Shown piece by piece: positions 15,098-60,305 of a DNA stretch of 64,000 nucleotides. The first letter of the stretch is position 1, and each line of letters begins with the position of its first letter. The DNA lies in the IMG/VR virus record IMGVR_UViG_3300034073_005389, positions 248,001 to 312,000 of that record, one strand, 5' to 3'. A program made the translations under genes and the position numbers. The notes beneath the pieces are model-generated. The model searched no databases, had not been told where the DNA came from, and worked only from the letters and a program-made list of their open reading frames with translations.

Positions 15098-15163
15098 AAT
15101 CTTCCTAAGAAAAAATGAAGAGGGTAACTAATACCCTCCTCATATACATAATGTAAATATTTA

Positions 15164-17095
15164 TCAACTATCTCGCCACAAATTAGCCGCTGCAAAAGCT
15201 AAAATCTCTTCTGCCGAATCTGGATTATATCCAATATTCATTAACTGCTCTGTCATATCTGAGTATTTCTTCTGCTGCTCAGAATCTCTTGTCTTGCTCT
15301 TTGTCACAATTCTAGCAATTGACTTAATGCCAGTAATTAAATATGACTCAATAGCAGACTTCAAAGGCTCATAACTAGTATACTTAATTGTATCTCCTCG
15401 TCTCATTCTAGAGAACATATAGGCAGTTACATCACTTCTAAAGCCATCTTTAGAAGAACCAGTGATACCAATCTGCTCCTCAATAGACTTCATAAAAGCT
15501 TCATCTGGAGTACGCTCTTCTTTTGTTACTCTGTCTTTTAATTTAACACGAGTTACATATGCCTCTGCATGATCCATGTAATTCTCAAAGATAGATTGAG
15601 CCTGCTCCTCATAAGCTGTAATAAATGCCTTGGCAATTTCACTTTCTAGTATCTTTAGATACTCTTCACGAATTGTCTTTTGTAGTAACTCTAAACAATG
15701 TGCTTTAAATTGCTCATCAGTAATCTGCTCTTTTACCATTCTGGTTAAAGAATTAATTACTGAAACAGGAGTAATCATATTCTTTTCTGAATTAGTTAAC
15801 GCATGATCTAATGATTTAGTGATAAATCTAGTAGAAATACCATCTAAACCCTCATGCTTAGCTTCTTCTCGTAAATCCTTAATATCTACCTTCTTAACTC
15901 TGCCCTTTTCAATGATTTCTTCACCATTGTAAATCTTCATCTTAGTCAATAAATCACATTTGCCAGATGTCTTTAATCTGCTCATTACAGAGAACATAGA
16001 AGCAACCTTCAAAGTATGAGGTGCGATATGTGCAGTAAAGTCTGATTTACCTAACATCTTTTCGTAAATCTTAATTTCTTGATCTAACTCAAGACAATAA
16101 GGAACAGCTACTTTTACAATACGGTCTAAAATAGCCTCATTAGTATGTTCAGACTGGAATCTATTCCATTCTGCTTCATTACAGTGAGCTAAAATAACTC
16201 CATCAAAATGAAGCATGTCTGATTTGCCAGGAGAAGGAACTCGTTTTTCTTGAGTAGCAGTAATAATAGTATGTAAGAATTCAATTTCATTCTTAAATAC
16301 TTCTACTAATTCTACGATACCACGATTGCCTACGTTGAAAGCGCCGGTTAAGGATAATGCTCGTGGATCATCTTCTGAGTATTTATCTAGTTTAGAAATA
16401 TCTACCGAGCCAATTAGCACAGAAACATCTTGTGAGTTAGCATCCATAGGGGGAACTGCTGCTACGCCACGTCTAGCCCTTTGAGAGAATGATGTTTCTT
16501 CTACTTCAAAGTTTTCATACTTACCGTCTAATTCATTCATGAGCTTATGACGGGCTACAGGAGAAATATCACCTTCAATTTTAACATTAAGTGTTTTCTC
16601 AAATGAGTCTCTTAAAGATCGAGGAATGAGTTGTAGTGGTTCGCCACGGTGAGGATCGCCCTTTAGGTGGTAGTATTTCTTACCTTCTAGCGCCTTTTTA
16701 ATATGTTCGGTGAGGGCTGACTTGCCTGCGCCTACTGGACCCATTAATAACAATACCTGGCGGGATTCTTCGCCACGCTGAGCGGCAGATGAAAGGAAAG
16801 ACATTACTTTGTTAATAACGTTTTCCATACCAAAGAATTCGTTTTCAAAATATTTATAGAGTTTTACATTTTCTCCATCAAATATTTTATGCTTACGGAT
16901 ATCGGAATCTGGCATAGTTTCTACGCCACGTTCTACAATAGCTTCGTATAATCTTTTATGTGATGATTTAACAATAGATGGATCTTGCTCGACTAAATCA
17001 ATGTAATCCATCAAGTTGCCAGAAAATTTCTTATTTTGACTGGCAGATTCTCTTGCCGATTGAATTTGTTTTAATAGTTGTTCTTTGGTACTCAT
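15164..17095 (-). CDS. prkA: PrkA/YeaG family AAA+ serine kinase
   Basis: LLLMGPVGAGKS Walker A; GAFNVGNRGIVELVEVFK; HCNEAEW...EAILDR; YCL family motifs; 643 aa. Confidence 0.95.
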   Translation of the reverse strand: MSTKEQLLKQIQSARESASQNKKFSGNLMDYIDLVEQDPSIVKSSHKRLYEAIVERGVETMPDSDIRKHKIFDGENVKLYKYFENEFFGMENVINKVMSFLSSAAQRGEESRQVLLLMGPVGAGKSALTEHIKKALEGKKYYHLKGDPHRGEPLQLIPRSLRDSFEKTLNVKIEGDISPVARHKLMNELDGKYENFEVEETSFSQRARRGVAAVPPMDANSQDVSVLIGSVDISKLDKYSEDDPRALSLTGAFNVGNRGIVELVEVFKNEIEFLHTIITATQEKRVPSPGKSDMLHFDGVILAHCNEAEWNRFQSEHTNEAILDRIVKVAVPYCLELDQEIKIYEKMLGKSDFTAHIAPHTLKVASMFSVMSRLKTSGKCDLLTKMKIYNGEEIIEKGRVKKVDIKDLREEAKHEGLDGISTRFITKSLDHALTNSEKNMITPVSVINSLTRMVKEQITDEQFKAHCLELLQKTIREEYLKILESEIAKAFITAYEEQAQSIFENYMDHAEAYVTRVKLKDRVTKEERTPDEAFMKSIEEQIGITGSSKDGFRSDVTAYMFSRMRRGDTIKYTSYEPLKSAIESYLITGIKSIARIVTKSKTRDSEQQKKYSDMTEQLMNIGYNPDSAEEILAFAAANLWRDS

Positions 17096-17115
17096 CTACT
17101 CTTTCCTTGTTAGAA

Positions 17116-17313
17116 TTACACTCTTCTAAAGCTTCCTTTAAACTTAGCCGGGGTTTCTTGCTCTTCTTGTTCTTCTAATTGTTTATTACTAATCACATCT
17201 TGTAAATATAAGACAATTTCTTTTGCTTTATCTTCTTCAGAAACAGGTTGTCTTAAAATAGACAAAATTGTATGATAATAATTATTTTTATCTATAATAT
17301 TTATTTTAGTCAA
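17116..17313 (-). CDS. Small hypothetical protein within the cassette
   Basis: 65 aa, overlapping the spoVR stop. Confidence 0.55.
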   Translation of the reverse strand: MTKINIIDKNNYYHTILSILRQPVSEEDKAKEIVLYLQDVISNKQLEEQEEQETPAKFKGSFRRV

Positions 17314-18631
17314 TGGATGTTACCTCATCATTTACTCTAGCCAATAATCTAACAGAGTTTCCCCACAAAGTTTTAATATGATGTACTACTGTAGTGGCAT
17401 ATGTTACTTCTAAATCTCTTCCATCATGTTCATGATATAAAACTAATTCGTTATTTCTTCTAACTTCTTCTACATAAACTACTGGAATAGAACCACCGCC
17501 AACTGATTTGGCTAATTCATTTTTAACAACTTCCCAACCATCCTCATCAGATATATCCTCGACAACTAATCCATTACCTCTTTTTTTGACGTAAGTAAAC
17601 AAATTTAATTCAGCACATAGTTCTGCGTCAAGATATTGTCTAATAAATGATGCATCATGGCATGCTTCTCTAGCAATCAGACATTCTTCCCAACCATATT
17701 TTTTCTCTATATGACGATATAAATGAAAACCTAAATGATATGGATTGATAGATCCAATATGCGGTCTAATAACTTGATTATGAGACTTAATAATAGGAAG
17801 ATGATATTCTGAAGGTAAATCTAAATCATGACAGATTTTATAATGCATTGCGCAAGAAAATCCTTCATTTGAGACTTTAGTTTGAATTTGTGGCCAGAAA
17901 TATTGACCTTCATCTCTAATAATATCAATGATATCTTTTTTCCAGCTAGGTAATTTAGCGTTCTCAGAAATAAAACCTAACAAATCATAATCTGGCTCTA
18001 AAGGAATTTTTTCTAATTCTCTATTTATTCTAAGCTGACGATTTGTATCATTTCTTTCTTTGGCTTCTTTTAATTCTTGAAGTTTTTCTTCTTTAATTTC
18101 TTCTTGAGTTCTACGACGTAAACCATATTTAGTAGTCTGAAATTGAACGGCATGACATGCATCAATTACTTTTTCTACTTCTTCGATTCCAATATTAGTA
18201 TCTTCTACATAAGATTGAATCCTCTTTTTAGCTGCACGGAATCTTTGAATAACTGTTTCAGGTCTAGTATCTTTAAACATTCTGTTATTTTTAAAAAAAT
18301 CAGAATGCCCAACGCAATGAGCCATAATAAGAATCTGTAAATATAATGGATTCTCTCTCATTAAATATGCAATTGACGGATGGCTATTGATGATAAGTTC
18401 GTAAGGTAAACCTTCCATACCAAGATTATACATCTGGTGTGTTCGCTCAAAAGCTTTGCCAAGAGACCAATGATTATACATAGACGGCATGCCATGATGA
18501 GCCATAGCCCCTATCATTTCATAATAATCTATTGTCTCATACTCGATAGGATAAGGGTCCAATTTGTACTTAGGATATATTTCATTAATTTTCTCATCCC
18601 ATTTTTCTAGATCTGATAATGTATAATCCAT
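17306..18631 (-). CDS. spoVR: SpoVR/YcgB family protein
   Basis: GMPSMYNHWSLGK, YELIINSHPSIAYL, AHCVGHSDFFKNN, QTKVSNEG and INPYHLG. Confidence 0.95.
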   Translation of the reverse strand: MDYTLSDLEKWDEKINEIYPKYKLDPYPIEYETIDYYEMIGAMAHHGMPSMYNHWSLGKAFERTHQMYNLGMEGLPYELIINSHPSIAYLMRENPLYLQILIMAHCVGHSDFFKNNRMFKDTRPETVIQRFRAAKKRIQSYVEDTNIGIEEVEKVIDACHAVQFQTTKYGLRRRTQEEIKEEKLQELKEAKERNDTNRQLRINRELEKIPLEPDYDLLGFISENAKLPSWKKDIIDIIRDEGQYFWPQIQTKVSNEGFSCAMHYKICHDLDLPSEYHLPIIKSHNQVIRPHIGSINPYHLGFHLYRHIEKKYGWEECLIAREACHDASFIRQYLDAELCAELNLFTYVKKRGNGLVVEDISDEDGWEVVKNELAKSVGGGSIPVVYVEEVRRNNELVLYHEHDGRDLEVTYATTVVHHIKTLWGNSVRLLARVNDEVTSID

Positions 18632-18633
18632 AC

Positions 18634-19812
18634 TTACACCTCGGAGCTAACTCCATTTAATATATTCTTAAAAGCAACCCAAACATCTTCTTTTCTTAAG
18701 ATATAAGCTGTATGCAATTTTTTATCTCTTAAGGGTTGCAAAACATCATACAGTGTAGCGGGTTGCTCATAAGCACTGCTAGTAACATCTTTATCTGGAT
18801 TAATTTCGCAATATCCAAACAATTGACATACTTCTTTTAATTCAGATACTTTATCGGCAAATATTTTATTATCAAAACCAAAGTTATCTCCATCGCTACA
18901 TTGAAAAATATAAATATTCCAAGCAGAAGGATGATATCTTTTATCAATAATTTCTTCCACTAATTTAACACCAGAAGAAGCTACTGTTCCACCGTATGTA
19001 CTTTGAGTAAAGAAGTCTTTTTCGTTTACTTCTCTTGCCTCTGCATCATGGGTAACGAAAACAATATCTAATGTTTCGTATTTGCTACGAAGAAACTGAT
19101 ACATCAAAAAGCAAAAGCTTCTAGCTAAGAACTTTTTGTCAGTGCTCATGGAGCCAGAAACATCCATTAAGAAAAAGACAACAGCATTAGTAGAAGGTTC
19201 CTCTTTCTTTTTATAATGCCTGAATTTTAAATCATCTTCATGGAATGGAAAAGTTTCGCCTTCTTCGGCAGTTTCTGGATCGAAACCAGAAGCTTTCATT
19301 CTTTTAATTCTAGCAATAGCAGATTTTTTCTTATCTAATCTAGGAATAATGCCTTCAGAACGATAACCACTACGCTTTAGCTTTTCTTGAGAAATATTGG
19401 ATAGTTGTTTTCGTTGCAACTCTGGAAGATTTAAGTCCTCAAATAAATATTGGGATAATTCATCTAGTGAAATTTCTACTTCGTAAAATTCTTCACCTTT
19501 TTCATTTCCGGCTTTATTACCAGGGGCAGGTTGATCATCATCTGATTGCCCGATTTTTTGACCTTTTTGAAGATCTTTGCCAGGAGCAGACCCTACTTGT
19601 TTAGAAGAGTTAGCACCATAGACAAACTTATATTCTTTAATACCTCTGACAGGTATTTTGAATTTCTTTTTTCCGTTTTCACCAATGATAGATTCTTCAG
19701 CTACAATGTTATGAATTCCGTCTTTAATAGCCTTTTCTATCTTCTGTTTATGACGCCTTCTATCAGAAGCGGAGCGATCTGCTGTGGTTTTATGTTCTCG
19801 GAAAATAGACAT
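18634..19812 (-). CDS. yeaH: YeaH/YhbH (UPF0229) vWA-domain protein
   Basis: DRSASDRRRH start; FFLMDVSGSM MIDAS motif; GGTVASS; WNIYIFQCSDGDN. Start set at the Met of MSIFREH. Confidence 0.93.
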   Translation of the reverse strand: MSIFREHKTTADRSASDRRRHKQKIEKAIKDGIHNIVAEESIIGENGKKKFKIPVRGIKEYKFVYGANSSKQVGSAPGKDLQKGQKIGQSDDDQPAPGNKAGNEKGEEFYEVEISLDELSQYLFEDLNLPELQRKQLSNISQEKLKRSGYRSEGIIPRLDKKKSAIARIKRMKASGFDPETAEEGETFPFHEDDLKFRHYKKKEEPSTNAVVFFLMDVSGSMSTDKKFLARSFCFLMYQFLRSKYETLDIVFVTHDAEAREVNEKDFFTQSTYGGTVASSGVKLVEEIIDKRYHPSAWNIYIFQCSDGDNFGFDNKIFADKVSELKEVCQLFGYCEINPDKDVTSSAYEQPATLYDVLQPLRDKKLHTAYILRKEDVWVAFKNILNGVSSEV

Positions 19813-19918
19813 TTTTAAAAAATACCTGGTTATTAGCATTAATATGCTTTTAATTTTAATTATCGCACGATATCGGCGTATAATGATATATTATATATCA
19901 AAGAAAAGAGAAATTAAA

Positions 19919-20074
19919 ATGAAAAACAAATCTATCTTAATAAGACTTTCAGATGATGAAATGAAAGAAATAAATGATTTATTTAAAAAAGAAATAGTCA
20001 ATAATGATTTAATTAGCAGGAGTGAATTTGTAAGAAGACTAATTAAATTGGGCATGGTGCAATATGAAAAATAA
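19919..20074 (+). CDS. Ribbon-helix-helix (CopG-like) DNA-binding protein
   Basis: KSILIRLSDDEMKEI...SRSEFVRRLI pattern; coupled to the downstream endonuclease. Confidence 0.6.
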   Translation: MKNKSILIRLSDDEMKEINDLFKKEIVNNDLISRSEFVRRLIKLGMVQYEK

Positions 20075-21554
20075 ATATGACACTAATTCCTTCATAAGGG
20101 TTGCGGCTGAAATTCATAAAAATAAATATGATTATTCTAAATCAGAATATACTACTATTTCTAATAAAATCACTATTATTTGCCCTAATCATGGAGAATT
20201 TAAACAAGAGGCAAAGTACCATTTAAAGGGTGGTGGATGCTATCAGTGCGCTAAAGAGTCTCGTAAAACCCCAAAAACAAGTATTGAAACTTTCATTGAA
20301 AAAGCAAGAAAAATATTTGGTAATAATTATTGTTATGATGAAGTTAATTATATTAATACTCTTACTAAAGTAAAAATAATTTGTAAAGAACACGGCTCTT
20401 TTGAACAAAAGCCAGTAAGTCATCTATCTGGAAGTGGATGCAGACTATGTTTTCATAACAGAAAAACATCGTCTAACGATCAATTCATAGATAAAGCAAT
20501 CAAAATTCATGGAAATAAATATAGTTATTTGCTATCTGAATATAAAAACAATAAATCAAATATAAAGATATTATGCCCTATTCATGGAGAGTTTGTACAA
20601 CAAGCCGCAGCTCATTTAAGAGGAGCTAATTGTCCAAGTTGCTCAAGGAAAACAGAAAAAATAGCAGGAGAATTTTTTAATAAAGTTAATCAGCTATATA
20701 AAAATAAATATGATTACTCATTATCAAAATATAAAAATAATAGGGAAAAAATAATTATTATTTGCCCAATTCATGGACAATTTACTCGTCAACCATGTAA
20801 ACATCTGGTAGGATACGGATGTTCCAGGTGTGGAAAATATGCAAAATTATCAAATAATTATTTTATTGAAAGAGCAGTTGAGCTACATGGCGATAAGTAT
20901 GATTACTCAAATATTAATATTACTAGTAATAAATCAATTGCGAGAATTATTTGCAAAATTCATGGCGAATTTAATCAGGAAGCAGGAAGCCACTTAAAAG
21001 GCAGCGGCTGTTCTGGATGTAGTGGTACTAAAAAATTAGACACCAATATTTTCATTAAAAGATCTAAAAAGATTCATGGAGATAAATATGATTATTCTTT
21101 ATCTAAATATGTTGGAATCAATAAAAAAGTTAAAATTATTTGTAAAGAACATGGAGAATTTTTACAAATAGCAAATAATCATATGCTTGGTGGAGGGTGT
21201 CCTAAATGTGGAGTAAGCTGCTCTAAAGATGAAATATCATGGATTAAATCATTTAATAATTTAAATATTATTTCTGGATACGACAAATTAATTATTAATA
21301 ATAAAAAATTAAAACCTGACGGATTTGATCCAACCACCAACACTGTTTATGAGTTTTATGGAGATTATTGGCATGGTAATCCAAAAAAATTTAAATCAGA
21401 AGATATCAACCCTTCTAATAATATTAGTTTTGGAGAACTTTATAAAAAAACTATAAAAAGAGCTAATATGATAAAAATGGCTGGTTACAATCTTGTTTCA
21501 ATTTGGGAATACGATTATAGAAAATCTCTATGTAAAACCAAAGATATTAAATAA
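20064..21554 (+). CDS. Free-standing endonuclease: six DUF723-like zinc repeats plus an EDxHD/Vsr-like nuclease domain
   Basis: Six KYDYS...IICxxHGxF...HLxGxGCxxC repeats; C-terminal PDGFD...VYEFYGDYWHG. Confidence 0.85.
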   Translation: MKNKYDTNSFIRVAAEIHKNKYDYSKSEYTTISNKITIICPNHGEFKQEAKYHLKGGGCYQCAKESRKTPKTSIETFIEKARKIFGNNYCYDEVNYINTLTKVKIICKEHGSFEQKPVSHLSGSGCRLCFHNRKTSSNDQFIDKAIKIHGNKYSYLLSEYKNNKSNIKILCPIHGEFVQQAAAHLRGANCPSCSRKTEKIAGEFFNKVNQLYKNKYDYSLSKYKNNREKIIIICPIHGQFTRQPCKHLVGYGCSRCGKYAKLSNNYFIERAVELHGDKYDYSNINITSNKSIARIICKIHGEFNQEAGSHLKGSGCSGCSGTKKLDTNIFIKRSKKIHGDKYDYSLSKYVGINKKVKIICKEHGEFLQIANNHMLGGGCPKCGVSCSKDEISWIKSFNNLNIISGYDKLIINNKKLKPDGFDPTTNTVYEFYGDYWHGNPKKFKSEDINPSNNISFGELYKKTIKRANMIKMAGYNLVSIWEYDYRKSLCKTKDIK

Positions 21555-21585
21555 TTTTAATTATATATCCAAAAGATATTATTAA

Positions 21586-21885
21586 TTATTGTAAGATATA
21601 CAATTTATAATTCTGCTTTTCTACTCTGTCAAGAACAGATTGTAAGTTTTTAATTGCAGAAGCTAATGTTTTTCCTTTCCCTTCCACTATATTAGAATCA
21701 ATGTCAGGGAAAGGATTAGCTAAATAAGTAACATACTCAGAATTATTTTCCTGGGTTAAAGGAAAAACATACCAATTTTTTTGATATTCATAATATTCAA
21801 TGCTAACTATCACCCAATTCATTGGGTGATAAGTCATTTTCTTAATTTTATTTTGAATATTTATTACTTGTTTAGAGACTTTCAT
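21586..21885 (-). CDS. Hypothetical protein coupled to aceA
   Basis: Start overlaps the aceA stop. Confidence 0.6.
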   Translation of the reverse strand: MKVSKQVINIQNKIKKMTYHPMNWVIVSIEYYEYQKNWYVFPLTQENNSEYVTYLANPFPDIDSNIVEGKGKTLASAIKNLQSVLDRVEKQNYKLYILQ

Positions 21886-23123
21886 TAGAATTGCTCTTGT
21901 TCAGTAGAGCCATGCAAGGCTAATGTAGACGATTTACCAGCAGCAATAACTTGAGATACTGCATCAAAATAACCTGTACCTACTTCTCGCTGGTGTTTAG
22001 TAGCCGTATATCCAACAGCCTCAGCATTAAATTCTGCTTGCTGCAACTCTGAATAAGCAGCCATTCCTCTATCACGGTATTGATTCGCCAATTGATACAT
22101 AGAGTGATTCAATGAATGGAATCCTGCCAAAGTTACAAACTGGAATTTATAACCCATAGCGCCTAATTCACGCTGAAATTTAGCGATAGTTGCATCATCT
22201 AAATTCTTCTTCCAATTAAAAGAAGGAGAGCAATTATAAGCTAGCAACTTTCCAGGAAATTTGGAATGTACAGCTTCTGCAAAAAGTCTAGCCTGTTCTA
22301 GATCTGGTGTAGAAGTCTCCATCCAAATCAAATCAGCATAAGGAGCATAAGCCAATGCCCTAGCTACAGAACGTTCTAGACCTGTACGGCATAAATAGTA
22401 AAAACCTTCAGGGGTTCGACCTTTATTTGCATCAATATAATGCTTATCATAGGGATCAACATCACTAGTGATAAGATTAGCAGAGTCTGCGTCAGTGCGA
22501 GCAATAATAAGAGTAGGAACTCCCATTACATCTGCTGCAAGTCTAGCGGCATTTAAAGTACGAATGAATTGAGAAGTAGGTACTAGAACTTTACCTCCCA
22601 TATGACCACATTTCTTTTCAGAAGCTAATTGATCTTCAAAATGAATACCAGAAGCACCGGCTTCAATCATAGCTTTAGTTAGTTCAAACACATTAAGAGG
22701 TCCACCAAAACCAGCTTCGGCATCAGCTACGATAGGAGCATACCAATCTGTTTTATTTTTACCTTCTGCGGTTTCAATTTGATCGGCTCGTTGTAGTGCG
22801 TTATTGATACGCTTTACAACGGCAGGAACGCTATTAGCTGGGTATAGGCTTTGGTCTGGATACATTTCTCCAGCTAGATTGGCATCAGCGGCAACCTGCC
22901 AACCAGAAAGATAAATAGCTTTTAATCCGGCTTTGACTTGTTGCATGGCTTGATTGCCAGTAAGAGCACCTAAAGCGGCAACATAAGGTTCTTCATGAAG
23001 AAGCTTCCAAAGCTTGTTAGCGCCATCGGTGGCTAATGTGTAAGCAATTTGTTTTGAGCCTCTGAGGCGCACAACATCTTGATATGTATAATTACGAACA
23101 ATTCCTGCAAATCTTTCTTTCAT
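21885..23123 (-). CDS. aceA: Isocitrate lyase
   Basis: [31 protein letters not shown], catalytic [16 protein letters not shown] and KHQREVG. Confidence 0.97.
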
Positions 23124-24129: not shown

Positions 24130-25368
24130 CTATGCGCCATAATCTGTTTTCCAAGGCGCAAAGCCTAATACTTTAAATAAGTCTAATTTATTTGGAGTAT
24201 TATTATATTGAGTTCTAGTAACATTACCATAAGCTACAACAGAAGGATTAGTAAAGCTATACTTCAACATATAGTTGTTAGCAAATATGGCTGAATTACC
24301 ATTTCCACCAAATAAAAATGCACGATCATAAATAACTGCCAAATGTGAAGAAGATACATTTCCTGGAATAGTTTTACCAGTATCTCCCCATTGAAGCGGT
24401 GAGGATAAGCTACATTGTAAAATCTTAGTCTGATATTTTTCATTTATTGCTGCATTGGTAGGAGTGATAAGATATCCTTTATCTCCTATAGTAAAAAACT
24501 GACCACAACATACTTCAAAGGGCAAGATAAATAAAGAAGTAGACCATGTAGTTGGATTGCTTAATGAGGCAGTAAAAATACTATTAACAGGATTACCATC
24601 AAAATTTTGACCACCAAACAAATACACGTTATTATCTATAATCCCTAAATGGGAATTATAGAGCGGTATTGGTAATGTCATTCCTGTATCTACCCAATTT
24701 AAGGGATCATTGGCTGGCGCTCGCAAAATAGCACTTGTAGCATGAGTTATTTCATATCCTCCAAATAAATAAATATAATTATCTATAATTGCTAACTGTG
24801 AATTTTGCAATCTTTTAGGCAACAAAGGACCATGATCTGTCCAGTCTAAAGGATTAGAGATACTGGCAGAATAAATATGATCAGTGCTTTGCGTATCTGC
24901 CCCGCCAAATAAATAAATATATCCATCAATAATAGCTAATTGAGATCCAGAAATTGCACTAGGCAATTGACCTACCACTTGCCATTCAGCTGGTCTGCTT
25001 AAACTTGCTTTTAATATACTATTAGAATACTTACCGCCAAATATATAAACGCTTCCCGAGTAACCATCATAGCCATCATACCCATCAATGATAGCAATTT
25101 GTCCTTCATAAAGTGATTCTGGTAAAACCTTTTTCATAGGTGACCAGGTTACTACATCAGGAAATGATATGTTAAATGGGAAGTTGAAATCGGCAATTAC
25201 TGAACTATCTAAAATAGCATAAGCTTGTACGTCTACAAAAGGATTATTTCCTGATTTTAACCCTGTATAATATTGGGCACTAAAATCAGGCTCATTATCT
25301 ACTACCCAAGTTCTATATTGGGTAATATTTAAATCTACATCTCTACCAATCATTTTATAGCGTACCAT
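24130..25368 (-). CDS. Kelch-repeat beta-propeller protein
   Basis: Repeated SQLAIIDxYIYLFGG...I..A...P..W units (about six). Confidence 0.85.
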   Translation of the reverse strand: MVRYKMIGRDVDLNITQYRTWVVDNEPDFSAQYYTGLKSGNNPFVDVQAYAILDSSVIADFNFPFNISFPDVVTWSPMKKVLPESLYEGQIAIIDGYDGYDGYSGSVYIFGGKYSNSILKASLSRPAEWQVVGQLPSAISGSQLAIIDGYIYLFGGADTQSTDHIYSASISNPLDWTDHGPLLPKRLQNSQLAIIDNYIYLFGGYEITHATSAILRAPANDPLNWVDTGMTLPIPLYNSHLGIIDNNVYLFGGQNFDGNPVNSIFTASLSNPTTWSTSLFILPFEVCCGQFFTIGDKGYLITPTNAAINEKYQTKILQCSLSSPLQWGDTGKTIPGNVSSSHLAVIYDRAFLFGGNGNSAIFANNYMLKYSFTNPSVVAYGNVTRTQYNNTPNKLDLFKVLGFAPWKTDYGA

Positions 25369-52755: not shown

Positions 52756-52817
52756 TATATTCTCCTTTTATGTTTGTTATGGTGGGAATATAATATATAA
52801 TTATGAATAGAAAATAG

Positions 52818-52890
52818 CTGAGGAAGAAGGATTCGAACCTTCAACTTACGGATTCAAAGTCCGTCATTCTGCCAATTGAATTATTCCTCA
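52818..52890 (-). tRNA. trnQ: tRNA-Gln(UUG)
   Basis: TGAGGAA/TTCCTCA stem, G73, ACGGA-CTTTGAA-TCCGT arm and GGTTCGAATCC. Confidence 0.93.
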
Positions 52891-58569: not shown

Positions 58570-58591
58570 ATGTTACCTAATAACAATTTAG

Positions 58592-58672
58592 TGGGAAGTG
58601 ATGAATTTGAACCACCGTAGTCTATGACAAAGCGTTTACAGCGCTCCCCCGTTAGCCACTTGGGTAACTTCC
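58592..58672 (-). tRNA. trnY: tRNA-Tyr(GUA)
   Basis: GGGAAGT/ACTTCCC stem, A73, AGCG-CTGTAAA-CGCT arm and long variable arm. Confidence 0.9.
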
Positions 58673-58869
58673 CGAATACAGCATATGCAAGCTGACATAT
58701 GCACTATATCTTTAAGGCATATATAGTTTGCCATTAAATCAATAATAATTCTGAGACCTAAAATTCATATACCGCTCTTGCTTTAAGAATTTAATCTCAT
58801 CTTCTAAAATTTTAATTTTTTTCTCTAGCTCTTCTATTTTAGCTAGTAAAATTTTTACATCTTCCAAAA

Positions 58870-60220: not shown

Positions 60221-60233
60221 AACTTTCCTTTAG

Positions 60234-60305
60234 AGCAGGCGACAAGACTTGAACTTGCAACATTTCGGATGGAAACCGAAGGCTCTGCCATTGAGCTACG
60301 CCTGC
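60234..60305 (-). tRNA. trnG: tRNA-Gly(UCC)
   Basis: GCAGGCG/CGCCTGC stem, U73 and TTCGG-TTTCCAT-CCGAA arm. Confidence 0.92.

What the first reader, a model, noticed from the sequence alone, without database searches (positions are those of the whole stretch)
15164..23123. Phage module pairing isocitrate lyase with a PrkA/YeaG-YeaH-SpoVR cassette
Seen: aceA, ORF99, yeaH, spoVR, ORF65 and prkA are all on the minus strand, separated only by an opposite-strand endonuclease insertion, with catalytic motifs intact (KKCGH, Walker A, MIDAS). The order yeaH-spoVR-prkA differs from the usual chromosomal prkA-yeaH. Known: YeaG/YeaH act in nitrogen-starvation survival, PrkA/SpoVR in sporulation, and I recall a report that E. 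coli YeaG phosphorylates AceA. Inference: a phage-borne kinase/AAA+ system with its substrate that rewires the glyoxylate shunt or dormancy in starving hosts. No malate synthase is in this window.
Basis: partly seen in the sequence, partly recalled or inferred. Interest (0 to 1): 0.8.

Follow-up and report, generated by a model that had tools for sequence, protein, structure and literature searches.

The report
Jumbo-phage PrkA stress cassette beside isocitrate lyase
An uncultured 366-kb freshwater/subsurface jumbo phage carries an intact isocitrate lyase next to a three-gene bacterial stress module (YeaH-SpoVR-PrkA); the module is a fixed feature of a large, widespread aquatic phage clade, but its adjacency to isocitrate lyase is sporadic and gives no support for a dedicated kinase-substrate pair.

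Summary
All six minus-strand genes and the plus-strand endonuclease lie at the stated coordinates, and the motifs are intact: KKCGH, Walker A GPVGAGKS and MIDAS DVSGS.

The permuted order yeaH-spoVR-prkA is real. It was present in all 150 phage relatives with enough sequence to judge. Bacteria showed prkA-yeaH-spoVR in 67 of 67 complete loci.

The cassette is under strong purifying selection. It forms one phage clade sister to Bacillota PrkA. Thermus phages and Ralstonia phage RsoM2USA acquired the triad separately.

The proposed kinase-with-substrate reading is poorly supported:
- ICL lies within about 10 kb of the cassette in only three lineages, each with a different architecture.
- Most close ICL relatives have no cassette nearby, and none of 79 bacterial loci link the two.
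- The E. coli YeaG-dependent AceA phosphosites (T3, T5, S398) are absent from the phage enzymes.

Both genes sit in one plastic accessory block that also holds glutamine synthetase, malate synthase, ClpP, PhoH and NUDIX genes in relatives. The best reading is two separately maintained genes in a block with a starvation theme. ICL in huge phages and PrkA/SpoVR genes in phages have been reported before.

The parts
15115..15143 (-). Terminator-like hairpin (12-bp stem followed by a T-run), 21 nt after the prkA stop codon. Likely 3' end of the cassette transcript.
   Evidence: 13 terminator-like sites in the region against 4.5 expected; this is the strongest; position relative to the genes
15164..17095 (-). 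prkA: 643-aa PrkA-family protein with an AAA+ N-terminal domain (Walker A 119-126) and a PrkA C-terminal kinase-like domain.
   Evidence: PDB 9xip 'Serine protein kinase' E=1.6e-91; phrog_22605; dN/dS 0.01-0.06
17116..17313 (-). ORF65: small lineage-specific ORF between spoVR and prkA, found only in the window and L005. No family match.
17306..18631 (-). spoVR: 441-aa SpoVR-family protein including the SpoVR_C domain. Invariant His/Glu residues (E78, H105, H109, H263, H284). Biochemical function unknown.
   Evidence: AF2 model pLDDT 88.8 with no PDB fold match; dN/dS 0.014-0.09 in unsaturated pairs
18634..19839 (-). yeaH/yhbH: DUF444 protein with a vWA-type MIDAS motif DVSGS at 226-230. JGI calls the start at 19812 (392 aa).
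   Evidence: (best NCBIfam match TIGR02877 spore_yhbH, 396 bits, below its cut-off); dN/dS 0.011-0.14
19808..21558 (+). Inserted mobile segment. It holds a small ORF (63 aa in the JGI gene call) and a 496-aa endonuclease-like gene at 20064-21554, with five zinc-ribbon repeats and a C-terminal nuclease-like region. It splits the ORF99-yeaH spacer.
   Evidence: phrog_681 and phrog_559 endonucleases; absent in L005 and in a lake-metagenome contig that joins 19807 to 21559; lowest GC of the region
21586..21885 (-). ORF99: small ORF abutting aceA, conserved only in L005 (62% identity). Its predicted fold resembles HicB/HPF-type small alpha/beta domains; this is a lead only.
21885..23123 (-). aceA: 412-aa isocitrate lyase with KKCGH at 170-174. 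It lacks the ~20-residue N-terminal extension of enterobacterial AceA.
   Evidence: dN/dS 0.07 against L005; GC3 matches the phage background

Best explanation
Two separately maintained host-derived functions lie side by side in a plastic accessory block of an uncultured jumbo phage.

(1) The cassette. yeaH-spoVR-(orf65)-prkA is a self-contained three-protein module. An ancestor of a large aquatic phage clade captured it once, from a Bacillota-type prkA-yhbH-spoVR operon. It was fixed in permuted order and has been inherited vertically under strong purifying selection. By analogy with the bacterial triad, the PrkA AAA+ ATPase works with the vWA/MIDAS protein YeaH and with SpoVR. It would act on target proteins by ATP-driven remodelling or proteolysis, or possibly by phosphorylation. 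The effect would be to set the starvation or stationary-phase physiology of a nutrient-limited host so that infection stays productive.

(2) ICL. This is a mobile auxiliary metabolic gene, already known from huge phages. It diverts isocitrate to succinate and glyoxylate, sparing carbon. It depends on host malate synthase, since the window has no aceB.

The adjacency reflects shared residence in one rearranging block and perhaps a shared ecological theme. It does not indicate an obligate enzyme-regulator pair.

Shown: gene identity, motifs, permuted order, clade-wide conservation, selection, phylogenetic origin, sporadic linkage, and loss of the E. coli phosphosites. Inferred: the biochemical mode of action and the effect on the host.
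For: Conservation. The permuted triad is present in 150 of 150 phage loci with enough sequence, out of 219 distinct PrkA sequences. More than 570 metagenome stretches and 207 IMG/VR contigs match, from TARA ocean and lake samples.

Selection. dN/dS is 0.01-0.14 in unsaturated pairs. GC3 matches the phage background.

Origin. The phage PrkA clade is monophyletic (SH-aLRT 100) and sister to Clostridia/Negativicutes PrkA at 55-57% identity. Thermus phage TMA and RsoM2USA branch elsewhere, so there were at least three independent captures.

Transcript end. A terminator-like hairpin follows prkA directly.

Bacterial triad acts as one pathway: conserved cofitness in six bacteria (10.1101/072470).

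ICL mobility. ICL occupies about 11-12 different contexts within the phage ICL clade, and only three of them are next to the cassette:
- window/L005: upstream, same strand
- L078: glnA-x-aceA-aceB-yeaH-spoVR-prkA
- L164/L165: convergent, beyond prkA

Shared block. Both genes lie in the same ancestral block of PMM-like, 5'-3' exonuclease, trypsin-like, NUDIX and ClpP genes.

Starvation-type neighbours in relatives: glutamine synthetase, malate synthase, PIN-PhoH, ClpP and NUDIX.

Prior reports. ICL is described in 98 huge phages, with the freshwater ones lacking malate synthase (10.1101/2025.02.27.640493).
Against: No expression or biochemical data exist. No RNA run was shown to hold the phage.

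The host is unknown.

Three independent adjacencies out of about a dozen ICL contexts is more than a uniform-placement null predicts (about 4% per context for a 300-kb genome). Some functional attraction therefore cannot be excluded. The tight co-directional arrays in L078, L005 and the endonuclease-less variant would allow co-transcription.

Universal retention in a clade with highly variable flanks could mean the cassette serves the phage's own development rather than host physiology.
Confidence: 0.5

Rival explanations
1. PrkA, with YeaH and SpoVR, is a kinase or AAA+ regulator whose dedicated client is the co-encoded ICL. The pair together rewires the glyoxylate shunt in starving hosts.
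For: E. coli YeaG phosphorylates AceA in vitro when malate is present (PMC8055822). Adjacency arises in three lineages with different architectures, including the tight array aceA-aceB-yeaH-spoVR-prkA in L078 and an uninterrupted co-directional array in L005 and the endonuclease-less variant. Both genes are intact and under selection.
Against: Linkage is absent in most cassette loci (4 of 162 have ICL) and in most ICL loci. In the L086/L087 lineage ICL is present, but the cassette is missing from the site where relatives carry it. L012, L017 and L022 show the reverse pattern. None of 79 bacterial cassette loci has ICL or malate synthase within 8 kb. Phosphosites T3, T5 and S398 are not conserved in any phage ICL examined. 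The nearest cellular PrkA subfamily is the Bacillota type, and B. subtilis PrkA showed no kinase activity (PMC9512850). In L164 the genes are convergent, and in the window they are split by an opposite-strand insertion.
Confidence: 0.12
2. The cassette serves the phage itself rather than host metabolism. It would act as an AAA+/vWA chaperone-protease for virion or replication-factory assembly, or as a conflict (defence or counter-defence) module. ICL is then an unrelated neighbour.
For: Retention is core-gene-like: 150 of 150 loci despite highly variable flanks. Relatives carry ClpP, a trypsin-like peptidase and a weakly GroEL-like protein close by. In Thermus phage TMA the cassette lies a few genes from the terminase large subunit. 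From general knowledge, AAA+ MoxR-type ATPases paired with vWA proteins often act as assembly or insertion chaperones or in conflict systems; PrkA and YeaH gave only faint matches to such models (bpMoxR E=0.006; cobaltochelatase subunit E=0.003).
Against: No real match to 5027 defence-system models. Bacterial homologues are starvation and stress genes with metabolic phenotypes. No structural genes lie next to the cassette in the window or in most relatives.
Confidence: 0.2
3. The arrangement is an artefact (chimeric assembly or bacterial contamination), or the genes are decaying passengers.
For: Metagenome origin. Some relatives are filed as bacterial MAGs.
Against: The same protein occurs on three contigs of 0.2-1 Mb, and the locus is held in full by three DNA runs. 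Independent assemblies support L164 and L165. All ORFs are intact, dN/dS is far below 1, and codon composition is ameliorated. The window has phage-type content: three tRNAs, an aminoacyl-tRNA synthetase, an RNA ligase and PHROG matches.
Confidence: 0.02

Closest known systems
Bacterial PrkA/YeaG - YeaH/YhbH - SpoVR/YcgB operon (Bacillota-type subfamily)
   Same: The same three protein families, full length, with Walker A and MIDAS intact. The three genes are contiguous and co-directional. The closest cellular PrkA is 55-57% identical (Clostridia and Negativicutes), and YeaH matches spore_yhbH best.
   Different: Gene order is circularly permuted: yeaH-spoVR-prkA here against prkA-yeaH-spoVR in 67 of 67 bacterial loci. 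The genes are phage-encoded. Scores fall below the NCBIfam equivalog cut-offs. A small lineage-specific ORF65 sits before prkA.
Thermus phages phiYS40 / TMA (DUF444 - SpoVR - 616-aa ORF - PrkA)
   Same: A cultured-phage cassette with the same permuted order and an extra ORF in the same slot as ORF65.
   Different: Only 32-34% PrkA identity. It branches with Armatimonadota, Thermomicrobiales and Acidobacteriota sequences on a long branch, so it is an independent capture. No ICL nearby.
Ralstonia jumbo phage RsoM2USA ORF30-29-28 and huge phages LR745206 / LR756502 / LR756504 / LR756511
   Same: Jumbo and huge phages carrying PrkA, DUF444 and SpoVR.
   Different: In RsoM2USA the genes are of the proteobacterial YeaG type, in canonical order (PrkA-YeaH-SpoVR) and about 33% identical, which marks a separate acquisition. 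The LR huge phages (28-33% identical) were not placed in the tree and their gene order was not examined.
Isocitrate lyase and malate synthase as auxiliary metabolic genes of huge phages and marine viral genomes
   Same: A phage-encoded, apparently active ICL. The freshwater type lacks malate synthase, as reported for 98 huge phages (10.1101/2025.02.27.640493). An aceBA operon occurs in a TARA viral genome (PMC5332604) and ICL occurs in phage C48C1.
   Different: Adjacency to the PrkA cassette was not mentioned in the two ICL papers examined for it (PrkA and SpoVR absent from both texts), and library searches combining PrkA or SpoVR with phage terms found no such report. The adjacency is lineage-specific.
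E. coli YeaG to AceA phosphorylation (Sultan et al. 2021)
   Same: The same two protein families are involved.
   Different: The E. coli sites T3, T5 and S398 are absent from the phage ICL. The phage PrkA is of a different subfamily. There is no conserved linkage in phages or bacteria.

Membership tests
Isocitrate lyase (PF00463 / NF011645) | Whole-protein score above the curated equivalog cut-off | tested here: met
   760.3 bits against a cut-off of 562
Isocitrate lyase (PF00463 / NF011645) | KKCGH active-site loop with the catalytic Cys | tested here: met
   KKCGH at 170-174. Cys172 aligns with enterobacterial Cys195 and is invariant in 6 of 6 sequences.
Isocitrate lyase (PF00463 / NF011645) | Enzymatic cleavage of isocitrate to succinate and glyoxylate | not testable with these tools
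   Needs an enzyme assay.
PrkA/YeaG family | AAA_PrkA N-terminal domain plus PrkA C-terminal domain, both full length | tested here: met
   PF08298 profile positions 2-357 of 358 and PF06798 positions 1-255 of 255
PrkA/YeaG family | Walker A P-loop (the Lys required for ATPase and protease activity in B. subtilis PrkA) | tested here: met
   GPVGAGKS at 119-126, invariant across phage and bacterial sequences; K108A data in PMC9512850
PrkA/YeaG family | Equivalog-level identity to enterobacterial YeaG (NF011999) | tested here: not met
   406 bits against a cut-off of 576. It branches with the Bacillota type, not the YeaG type.
PrkA/YeaG family | Protein kinase or ATP-dependent protease activity | not testable with these tools
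   Needs biochemistry.
YeaH/YhbH (DUF444) | PF04285 match and a vWA MIDAS motif DxSxS | tested here: met
   356 bits; DVSGS at 226-230. TIGR02877 scores 396 bits, below its 468 cut-off.
SpoVR/YcgB | PF04293 plus the SpoVR_C domain | tested here: met
   384 bits and 31.6 bits. The YcgB equivalog NF008737 is not reached: 279 bits against 679.
Canonical bacterial prkA operon | Gene order prkA > yeaH > spoVR | tested here: not met
   The order here is yeaH > spoVR > prkA. Bacteria are canonical in 67 of 67 loci; phages of this clade are permuted in 150 of 150.
Dedicated YeaG-AceA regulator-substrate pair | Conservation of the YeaG-dependent AceA phosphosites (T3, T5, S398) | tested here: not met
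   The N-terminal segment is absent. The S398 position is Lys or Arg in all phage ICLs aligned.
Dedicated YeaG-AceA regulator-substrate pair | Conserved genomic linkage of the two partners | tested here: not met
   4 of 162 cassette loci have ICL. Most ICL loci lack the cassette. None of 79 bacterial loci link them.
Dedicated YeaG-AceA regulator-substrate pair | Physical interaction or modification | not testable with these tools
   Needs a pull-down, Phos-tag gel or mass spectrometry.
Homing-endonuclease-type mobile gene | Endonuclease family match plus presence/absence polymorphism at an otherwise conserved site | tested here: met
   phrog_681 (6e-82) and phrog_559. Absent in L005 and in a lake contig that joins 19807 to 21559.
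Known anti-phage defence systems (PADLOC) | Match to a defence-system protein model | tested here: not met
   Only generic P-loop similarity; best hit DolB at 2.6e-06 over about 100 residues.

The most novel reading that the evidence does not exclude
The PrkA-YeaH-SpoVR machine is a direct post-translational controller of central carbon and nitrogen enzymes such as ICL, malate synthase and glutamine synthetase. Jumbo phages would then repeatedly assemble operons that join the controller to its clients, as in L078 (glnA-x-aceA-aceB-yeaH-spoVR-prkA) and the window lineage. If so, phage gene neighbourhoods would reveal the long-sought targets of this widespread bacterial stress triad.
Probability: 0.12. 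Interest if true: 0.8.

Novelty: new member of a known kind. Interest (0 to 1): 0.42.

Why it matters
PrkA/YeaG-YeaH-SpoVR is one of the most widespread bacterial stress modules whose mechanism is still unknown. This work shows four things about it:
- It is a fixed, selected, order-permuted module in a very large clade of uncultured marine and freshwater jumbo phages.
- Phages captured the triad at least three separate times.
- This probably explains the 'spoVR sporulation AMG' signal reported in ocean viromes, where endospore formers are presumably uncommon (general knowledge, not tested here).
- Cultured systems exist in which the triad could be tested genetically: phiYS40/TMA and RsoM2USA.

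The appealing ICL-as-substrate idea is downgraded, so effort can go to unbiased identification of the cassette's clients.

Tried and rejected
- Near-identical DNA search against 50,697 phage records found nothing. The UvrD helicase has no cultured relative above about 35% identity, so the phage lineage and host stay unassigned.
- The SpoVR AlphaFold model is confident (pLDDT 88.8), but the PDB fold search gave no significant match (best E=1.3, TM about 0.1). It gives no mechanistic lead. SpoVR and YeaH have no solved homologues by sequence.
- ORF65, ORF99 and ORF207 have no Pfam, NCBIfam, PHROG or PADLOC match. The Atlas gives only a weak HicB/HPF-like fold lead for ORF99. The 99-aa ORF beside ICL in L164 is unrelated to ORF99.
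The malate-synthase scan used patterns too narrow to be exhaustive and found five loci. Whether aceB lies elsewhere on the 366-kb contig, and whether long ICL contigs carry the cassette elsewhere, remains untested.
- Matching contig lengths between the top 120 ICL and top 120 PrkA clusters overlapped only for the window contig, but both lists are truncated.
- No listed RNA run holds the phage. The two metatranscriptomes laid showed only short matches to the conserved ICL core from other organisms.
- Sigma-70-like promoter matches are at chance level: 60 found against 57.5 expected.
- No Rfam family matches in 13-26 kb.
- A literature search for a PrkA structure paper was unproductive.
Full report
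WHAT IS THERE

The window comes from JGI metagenome 3300034073, contig Ga0310130_0000007 (366,373 bp). IMG/VR holds it as a 361-kb viral genome. DNA runs that hold the stretch in full are labelled subsurface metagenome. Partial holders are mostly lake and freshwater metagenomes, with two marine runs.

The window looks like a phage:
- 32% GC with long runs of small co-directional ORFs
- three tRNAs and a class II aminoacyl-tRNA synthetase
- RNA ligase, Dam-type methylase, UvrD-like helicase and 5'-3' exonuclease, with PHROG matches

No cultured phage is close.

The motifs are present: ICL KKCGH at 170-174, PrkA Walker A GPVGAGKS at 119-126, and YeaH MIDAS DVSGS at 226-230. ICL Cys172 aligns with the enterobacterial catalytic Cys195. 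A strong terminator-like hairpin at 15143-15115 follows the prkA stop directly. No malate synthase or AceK is in the 64 kb.

THE ENDONUCLEASE IS A RECENT INSERTION

The plus-strand 496-aa gene matches phage endonuclease families (phrog_681 at 6e-82, and phrog_559). It consists of repeated zinc-ribbon modules plus a C-terminal nuclease-like region.

It is missing from the closest relative, L005 (PrkA 96% identical). There the array ICL-312 aa-ORF99-93 aa-YeaH-SpoVR-73 aa-PrkA is uninterrupted and co-directional. A contig from a lake metagenome joins window position 19807 to 21559 with eight other bases between them. That puts ORF99 about 35 nt from yeaH.

THE CASSETTE IS A FIXED, PERMUTED MODULE OF A LARGE PHAGE CLADE

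Searches with PrkA returned 207 IMG/VR contigs and more than 570 metagenome stretches, many from TARA ocean samples and lakes. The 160 loci kept ranged from 66 to 100% identity to the window.

Among 219 distinct PrkA sequences gathered, 151 had room upstream for the other two genes. The 150 phage loci among them all carried yeaH-spoVR-prkA in that order. The single exception is a bacterial locus.

By contrast, 67 of 67 complete bacterial loci read prkA-yeaH-spoVR. The permuted order appeared elsewhere in only two places:
- Thermus phage TMA (DUF444-SpoVR-616 aa-PrkA)
- a 305,838-bp contig filed as 'Methylococcaceae bacterium TMED69', whose PrkA is 72% identical and nests inside the phage clade

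Pairwise dN/dS in unsaturated pairs is 0.01-0.06 for PrkA, 0.014-0.09 for SpoVR and 0.011-0.14 for YeaH. Third-position GC matches the phage background.

In a PrkA tree the phage clade is monophyletic (SH-aLRT 100). It is sister to Clostridia/Negativicutes sequences at 55-57% identity (support 96). Proteobacterial YeaG-type proteins, about 34% identical, lie far away. Ralstonia phage RsoM2USA falls inside that proteobacterial group. Thermus phage TMA sits on a long branch with other phyla. Phages therefore captured the triad at least three times.

PHROGs already holds families for all three proteins. RsoM2USA and the Thermus phages carry annotations for them. spoVR was reported as the most abundant 'sporulation AMG' in an ocean oxygen-minimum-zone virome (PMC8940887). 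My library searches found no paper that treats the phage triad as a unit.

IS ICL LINKED TO THE CASSETTE?

Mostly not. The counts:
- 55 cassette loci have at least 5 kb on both sides. Only the window and L005 contain ICL.
- 162 cassette loci have at least 3 kb on one side. Four contain ICL: window, L005, L078 and L164.
- 78 non-window ICL loci came from IMG/VR. Only the L005 contig has the cassette.
- ICLs 82-86% identical to the window's, on contigs of 200-282 kb, have no cassette within 10 kb: L087, L166, L167, L364, L365 and the P0013 contig.

One subclade shows a complementary pattern. L086 and L087 have ICL between two conserved genes but lack the cassette at the site where their relatives carry it. 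L012, L017 and L022 have the cassette but no ICL at the corresponding place.

The three linked lineages differ in architecture:
- window/L005: ICL upstream, same strand
- L164/L165: ICL followed by two small ORFs, convergent with prkA. This rests on two independent assemblies, one of 274 kb.
- L078: glutamine synthetase-x-ICL-malate synthase-YeaH-SpoVR-PrkA-trypsin-like-PAPS-reductase-like-x-ClpP, tightly packed on one strand. This rests on a single 14.6-kb contig.

These lineages are scattered on both the PrkA tree and the ICL tree. In the ICL tree the window belongs to a freshwater clade without aceB (support 99). Its sister clade, which includes L078, is linked to aceB. That matches a preprint reporting ICL in 98 huge phages and malate synthase only outside freshwater.

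Both ICL and the cassette lie in the same ancestral neighbourhood of PMM-like hydrolase, 5'-3' exonuclease, trypsin-like peptidase, NUDIX and ClpP genes. That neighbourhood is heavily rearranged among relatives. Occasional juxtaposition is therefore unsurprising.

Three adjacencies among roughly a dozen ICL contexts is still more than uniform placement would give. A loose functional attraction cannot be excluded. None of 79 bacterial cassette loci had ICL or malate synthase within 8 kb.

DIRECT TEST OF THE KINASE-SUBSTRATE IDEA

The recalled paper is real. E. coli YeaG phosphorylates AceA in vitro only with malate present. The candidate sites from phosphoproteomics are T3, T5 and S398 (PMC8055822).

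I aligned the phage ICLs (window, L078, L164, phage C48C1) with enterobacterial AceA. The phage enzymes lack the N-terminal ~20 residues that carry T3 and T5. They have Lys or Arg at the S398 position.

B. subtilis PrkA was shown to be an ATP-dependent, Lon-like protease with no detectable kinase activity (PMC9512850). The phage PrkA's nearest cellular relatives are also Bacillota proteins (Clostridia and Negativicutes); B. subtilis itself was not in the tree. None of this rules out other sites or a non-kinase interaction.

HOW IT MOST LIKELY WORKS

Shown: three intact, co-inherited, strongly constrained genes ending at a terminator-like site. An AAA+ ATPase is paired with a vWA/MIDAS protein and a third conserved protein with an invariant His/Glu cluster.

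Established for bacteria: the three genes behave as one pathway, with conserved cofitness and phenotypes in nitrogen and carbon source use (10.1101/072470).

Inferred: in the infected cell, a PrkA ring uses YeaH as an adaptor, with SpoVR as partner or effector. It would remodel, degrade or phosphorylate a set of client proteins and so fix the host's starvation programme in a state favourable to phage production. ICL would separately reroute isocitrate to conserve carbon, relying on host malate synthase in this lineage.

The starvation theme is suggested by neighbours in relatives: glutamine synthetase, malate synthase, PIN-PhoH, ClpP and NUDIX.

A serious rival is that the cassette serves phage development or conflict. 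It is retained like a core gene and sits near proteases and a weakly GroEL-like protein. PADLOC gave nothing.

COMPARISON AND NOVELTY

Each component is a member of a known kind:
- ICL as a huge-phage auxiliary gene has been described.
- PrkA, SpoVR and DUF444 genes are annotated in cultured phages and are in PHROGs.

What appears not to have been described in the searched library:
- the clade-wide fixation of the triad
- its constant permuted order
- the Bacillota-type origin
- the multiple independent captures
- the occasional operon-like fusion with aceA, aceB and glnA

The pairing itself is not a conserved system. I file the finding as a new member of a known kind, of moderate interest. 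A minority reading (about 12%) is that the neighbourhoods point to real clients of the triad.

LIMITS

- Only 64 kb of the 366-kb genome was readable.
- Flanks of relatives were capped at 10 kb.
- The collection scans are pattern-based and truncated.
- The quick trees carry SH-aLRT support only.
- The host is unknown.
- No transcript or protein data exist.

Noticed in passing
L370 (GenBank NHDW01000006.1, 305,838 bp, 'MAG: Methylococcaceae bacterium TMED69'): This contig carries the permuted yeaH-spoVR-prkA cassette with PrkA 72% identical to the window's. It nests inside the phage clade, so it is probably a jumbo-phage genome binned as a bacterium. Similarly, an ICL 86% identical to the window's is labelled 'Chlamydiae bacterium' (P0051), and the 'Lutibacter sp. 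B2' PrkA falls among Bacillota.
   Followed up: partly
L078:727-12155: A single contig has glutamine synthetase, ICL, malate synthase, YeaH, SpoVR, PrkA, a trypsin-like peptidase, a PAPS-reductase-like protein and ClpP packed on one strand. It reads as a carbon/nitrogen-starvation-themed block. The glutamine-synthetase cluster (c163) also sits beside ICL in L105, L108 and L109.
   Followed up: partly
window:17306-18631: SpoVR gives a confident AlphaFold model (pLDDT 88.8), mostly helical with a C-terminal beta domain. It has no significant PDB fold match. Invariant E78, H105, H109, H263, H284 and D326 suggest a metal-binding site.
   Followed up: partly
relatives, e.g. L063:12673-13995: A 440-aa protein (cluster c4) lies just downstream of prkA in most marine relatives (found in 66 loci in all). 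It has a weak match to phage GroEL-like proteins (phrog_5725, 3e-11) and is absent from the window.
   Followed up: no
window:23136-23759 and 24130-25368: Next to ICL lie a 207-aa protein made of repeats with a recurring 'HREDGPA' motif (no family match) and a 412-aa Kelch-repeat protein. Both are shared only with L005.
   Followed up: no
window:14681-15097: A half-size (138 aa) EamA/DMT-type membrane protein lies immediately after the prkA terminator. It is specific to the window's own contig.
   Followed up: no
window:21586-21885: ORF99 has a confident predicted small alpha/beta fold in the ESM Atlas. It resembles HicB antitoxins and ribosome hibernation factors at TM 0.47-0.64. This is a lead only.
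   Followed up: partly
window:19883-20074 (+): A small plus-strand ORF (63 aa in the JGI gene call) directly precedes the endonuclease and lies inside the inserted segment. Its function was not examined.
   Followed up: no
window:46100-47650, 52817-52890, 58591-58673, 60233-60305: The window holds a class II (Asp/Lys/Asn-type) aminoacyl-tRNA synthetase and tRNA-Gln, tRNA-Tyr and tRNA-Gly genes, typical of translation-related cargo in jumbo phages.
   Followed up: no
L369:3007-4857 (Thermus phage TMA_057): A 616-aa ORF with no Pfam match sits between spoVR and prkA in the Thermus phages. This is the same slot that the 65-aa ORF occupies in the window.
   Followed up: no
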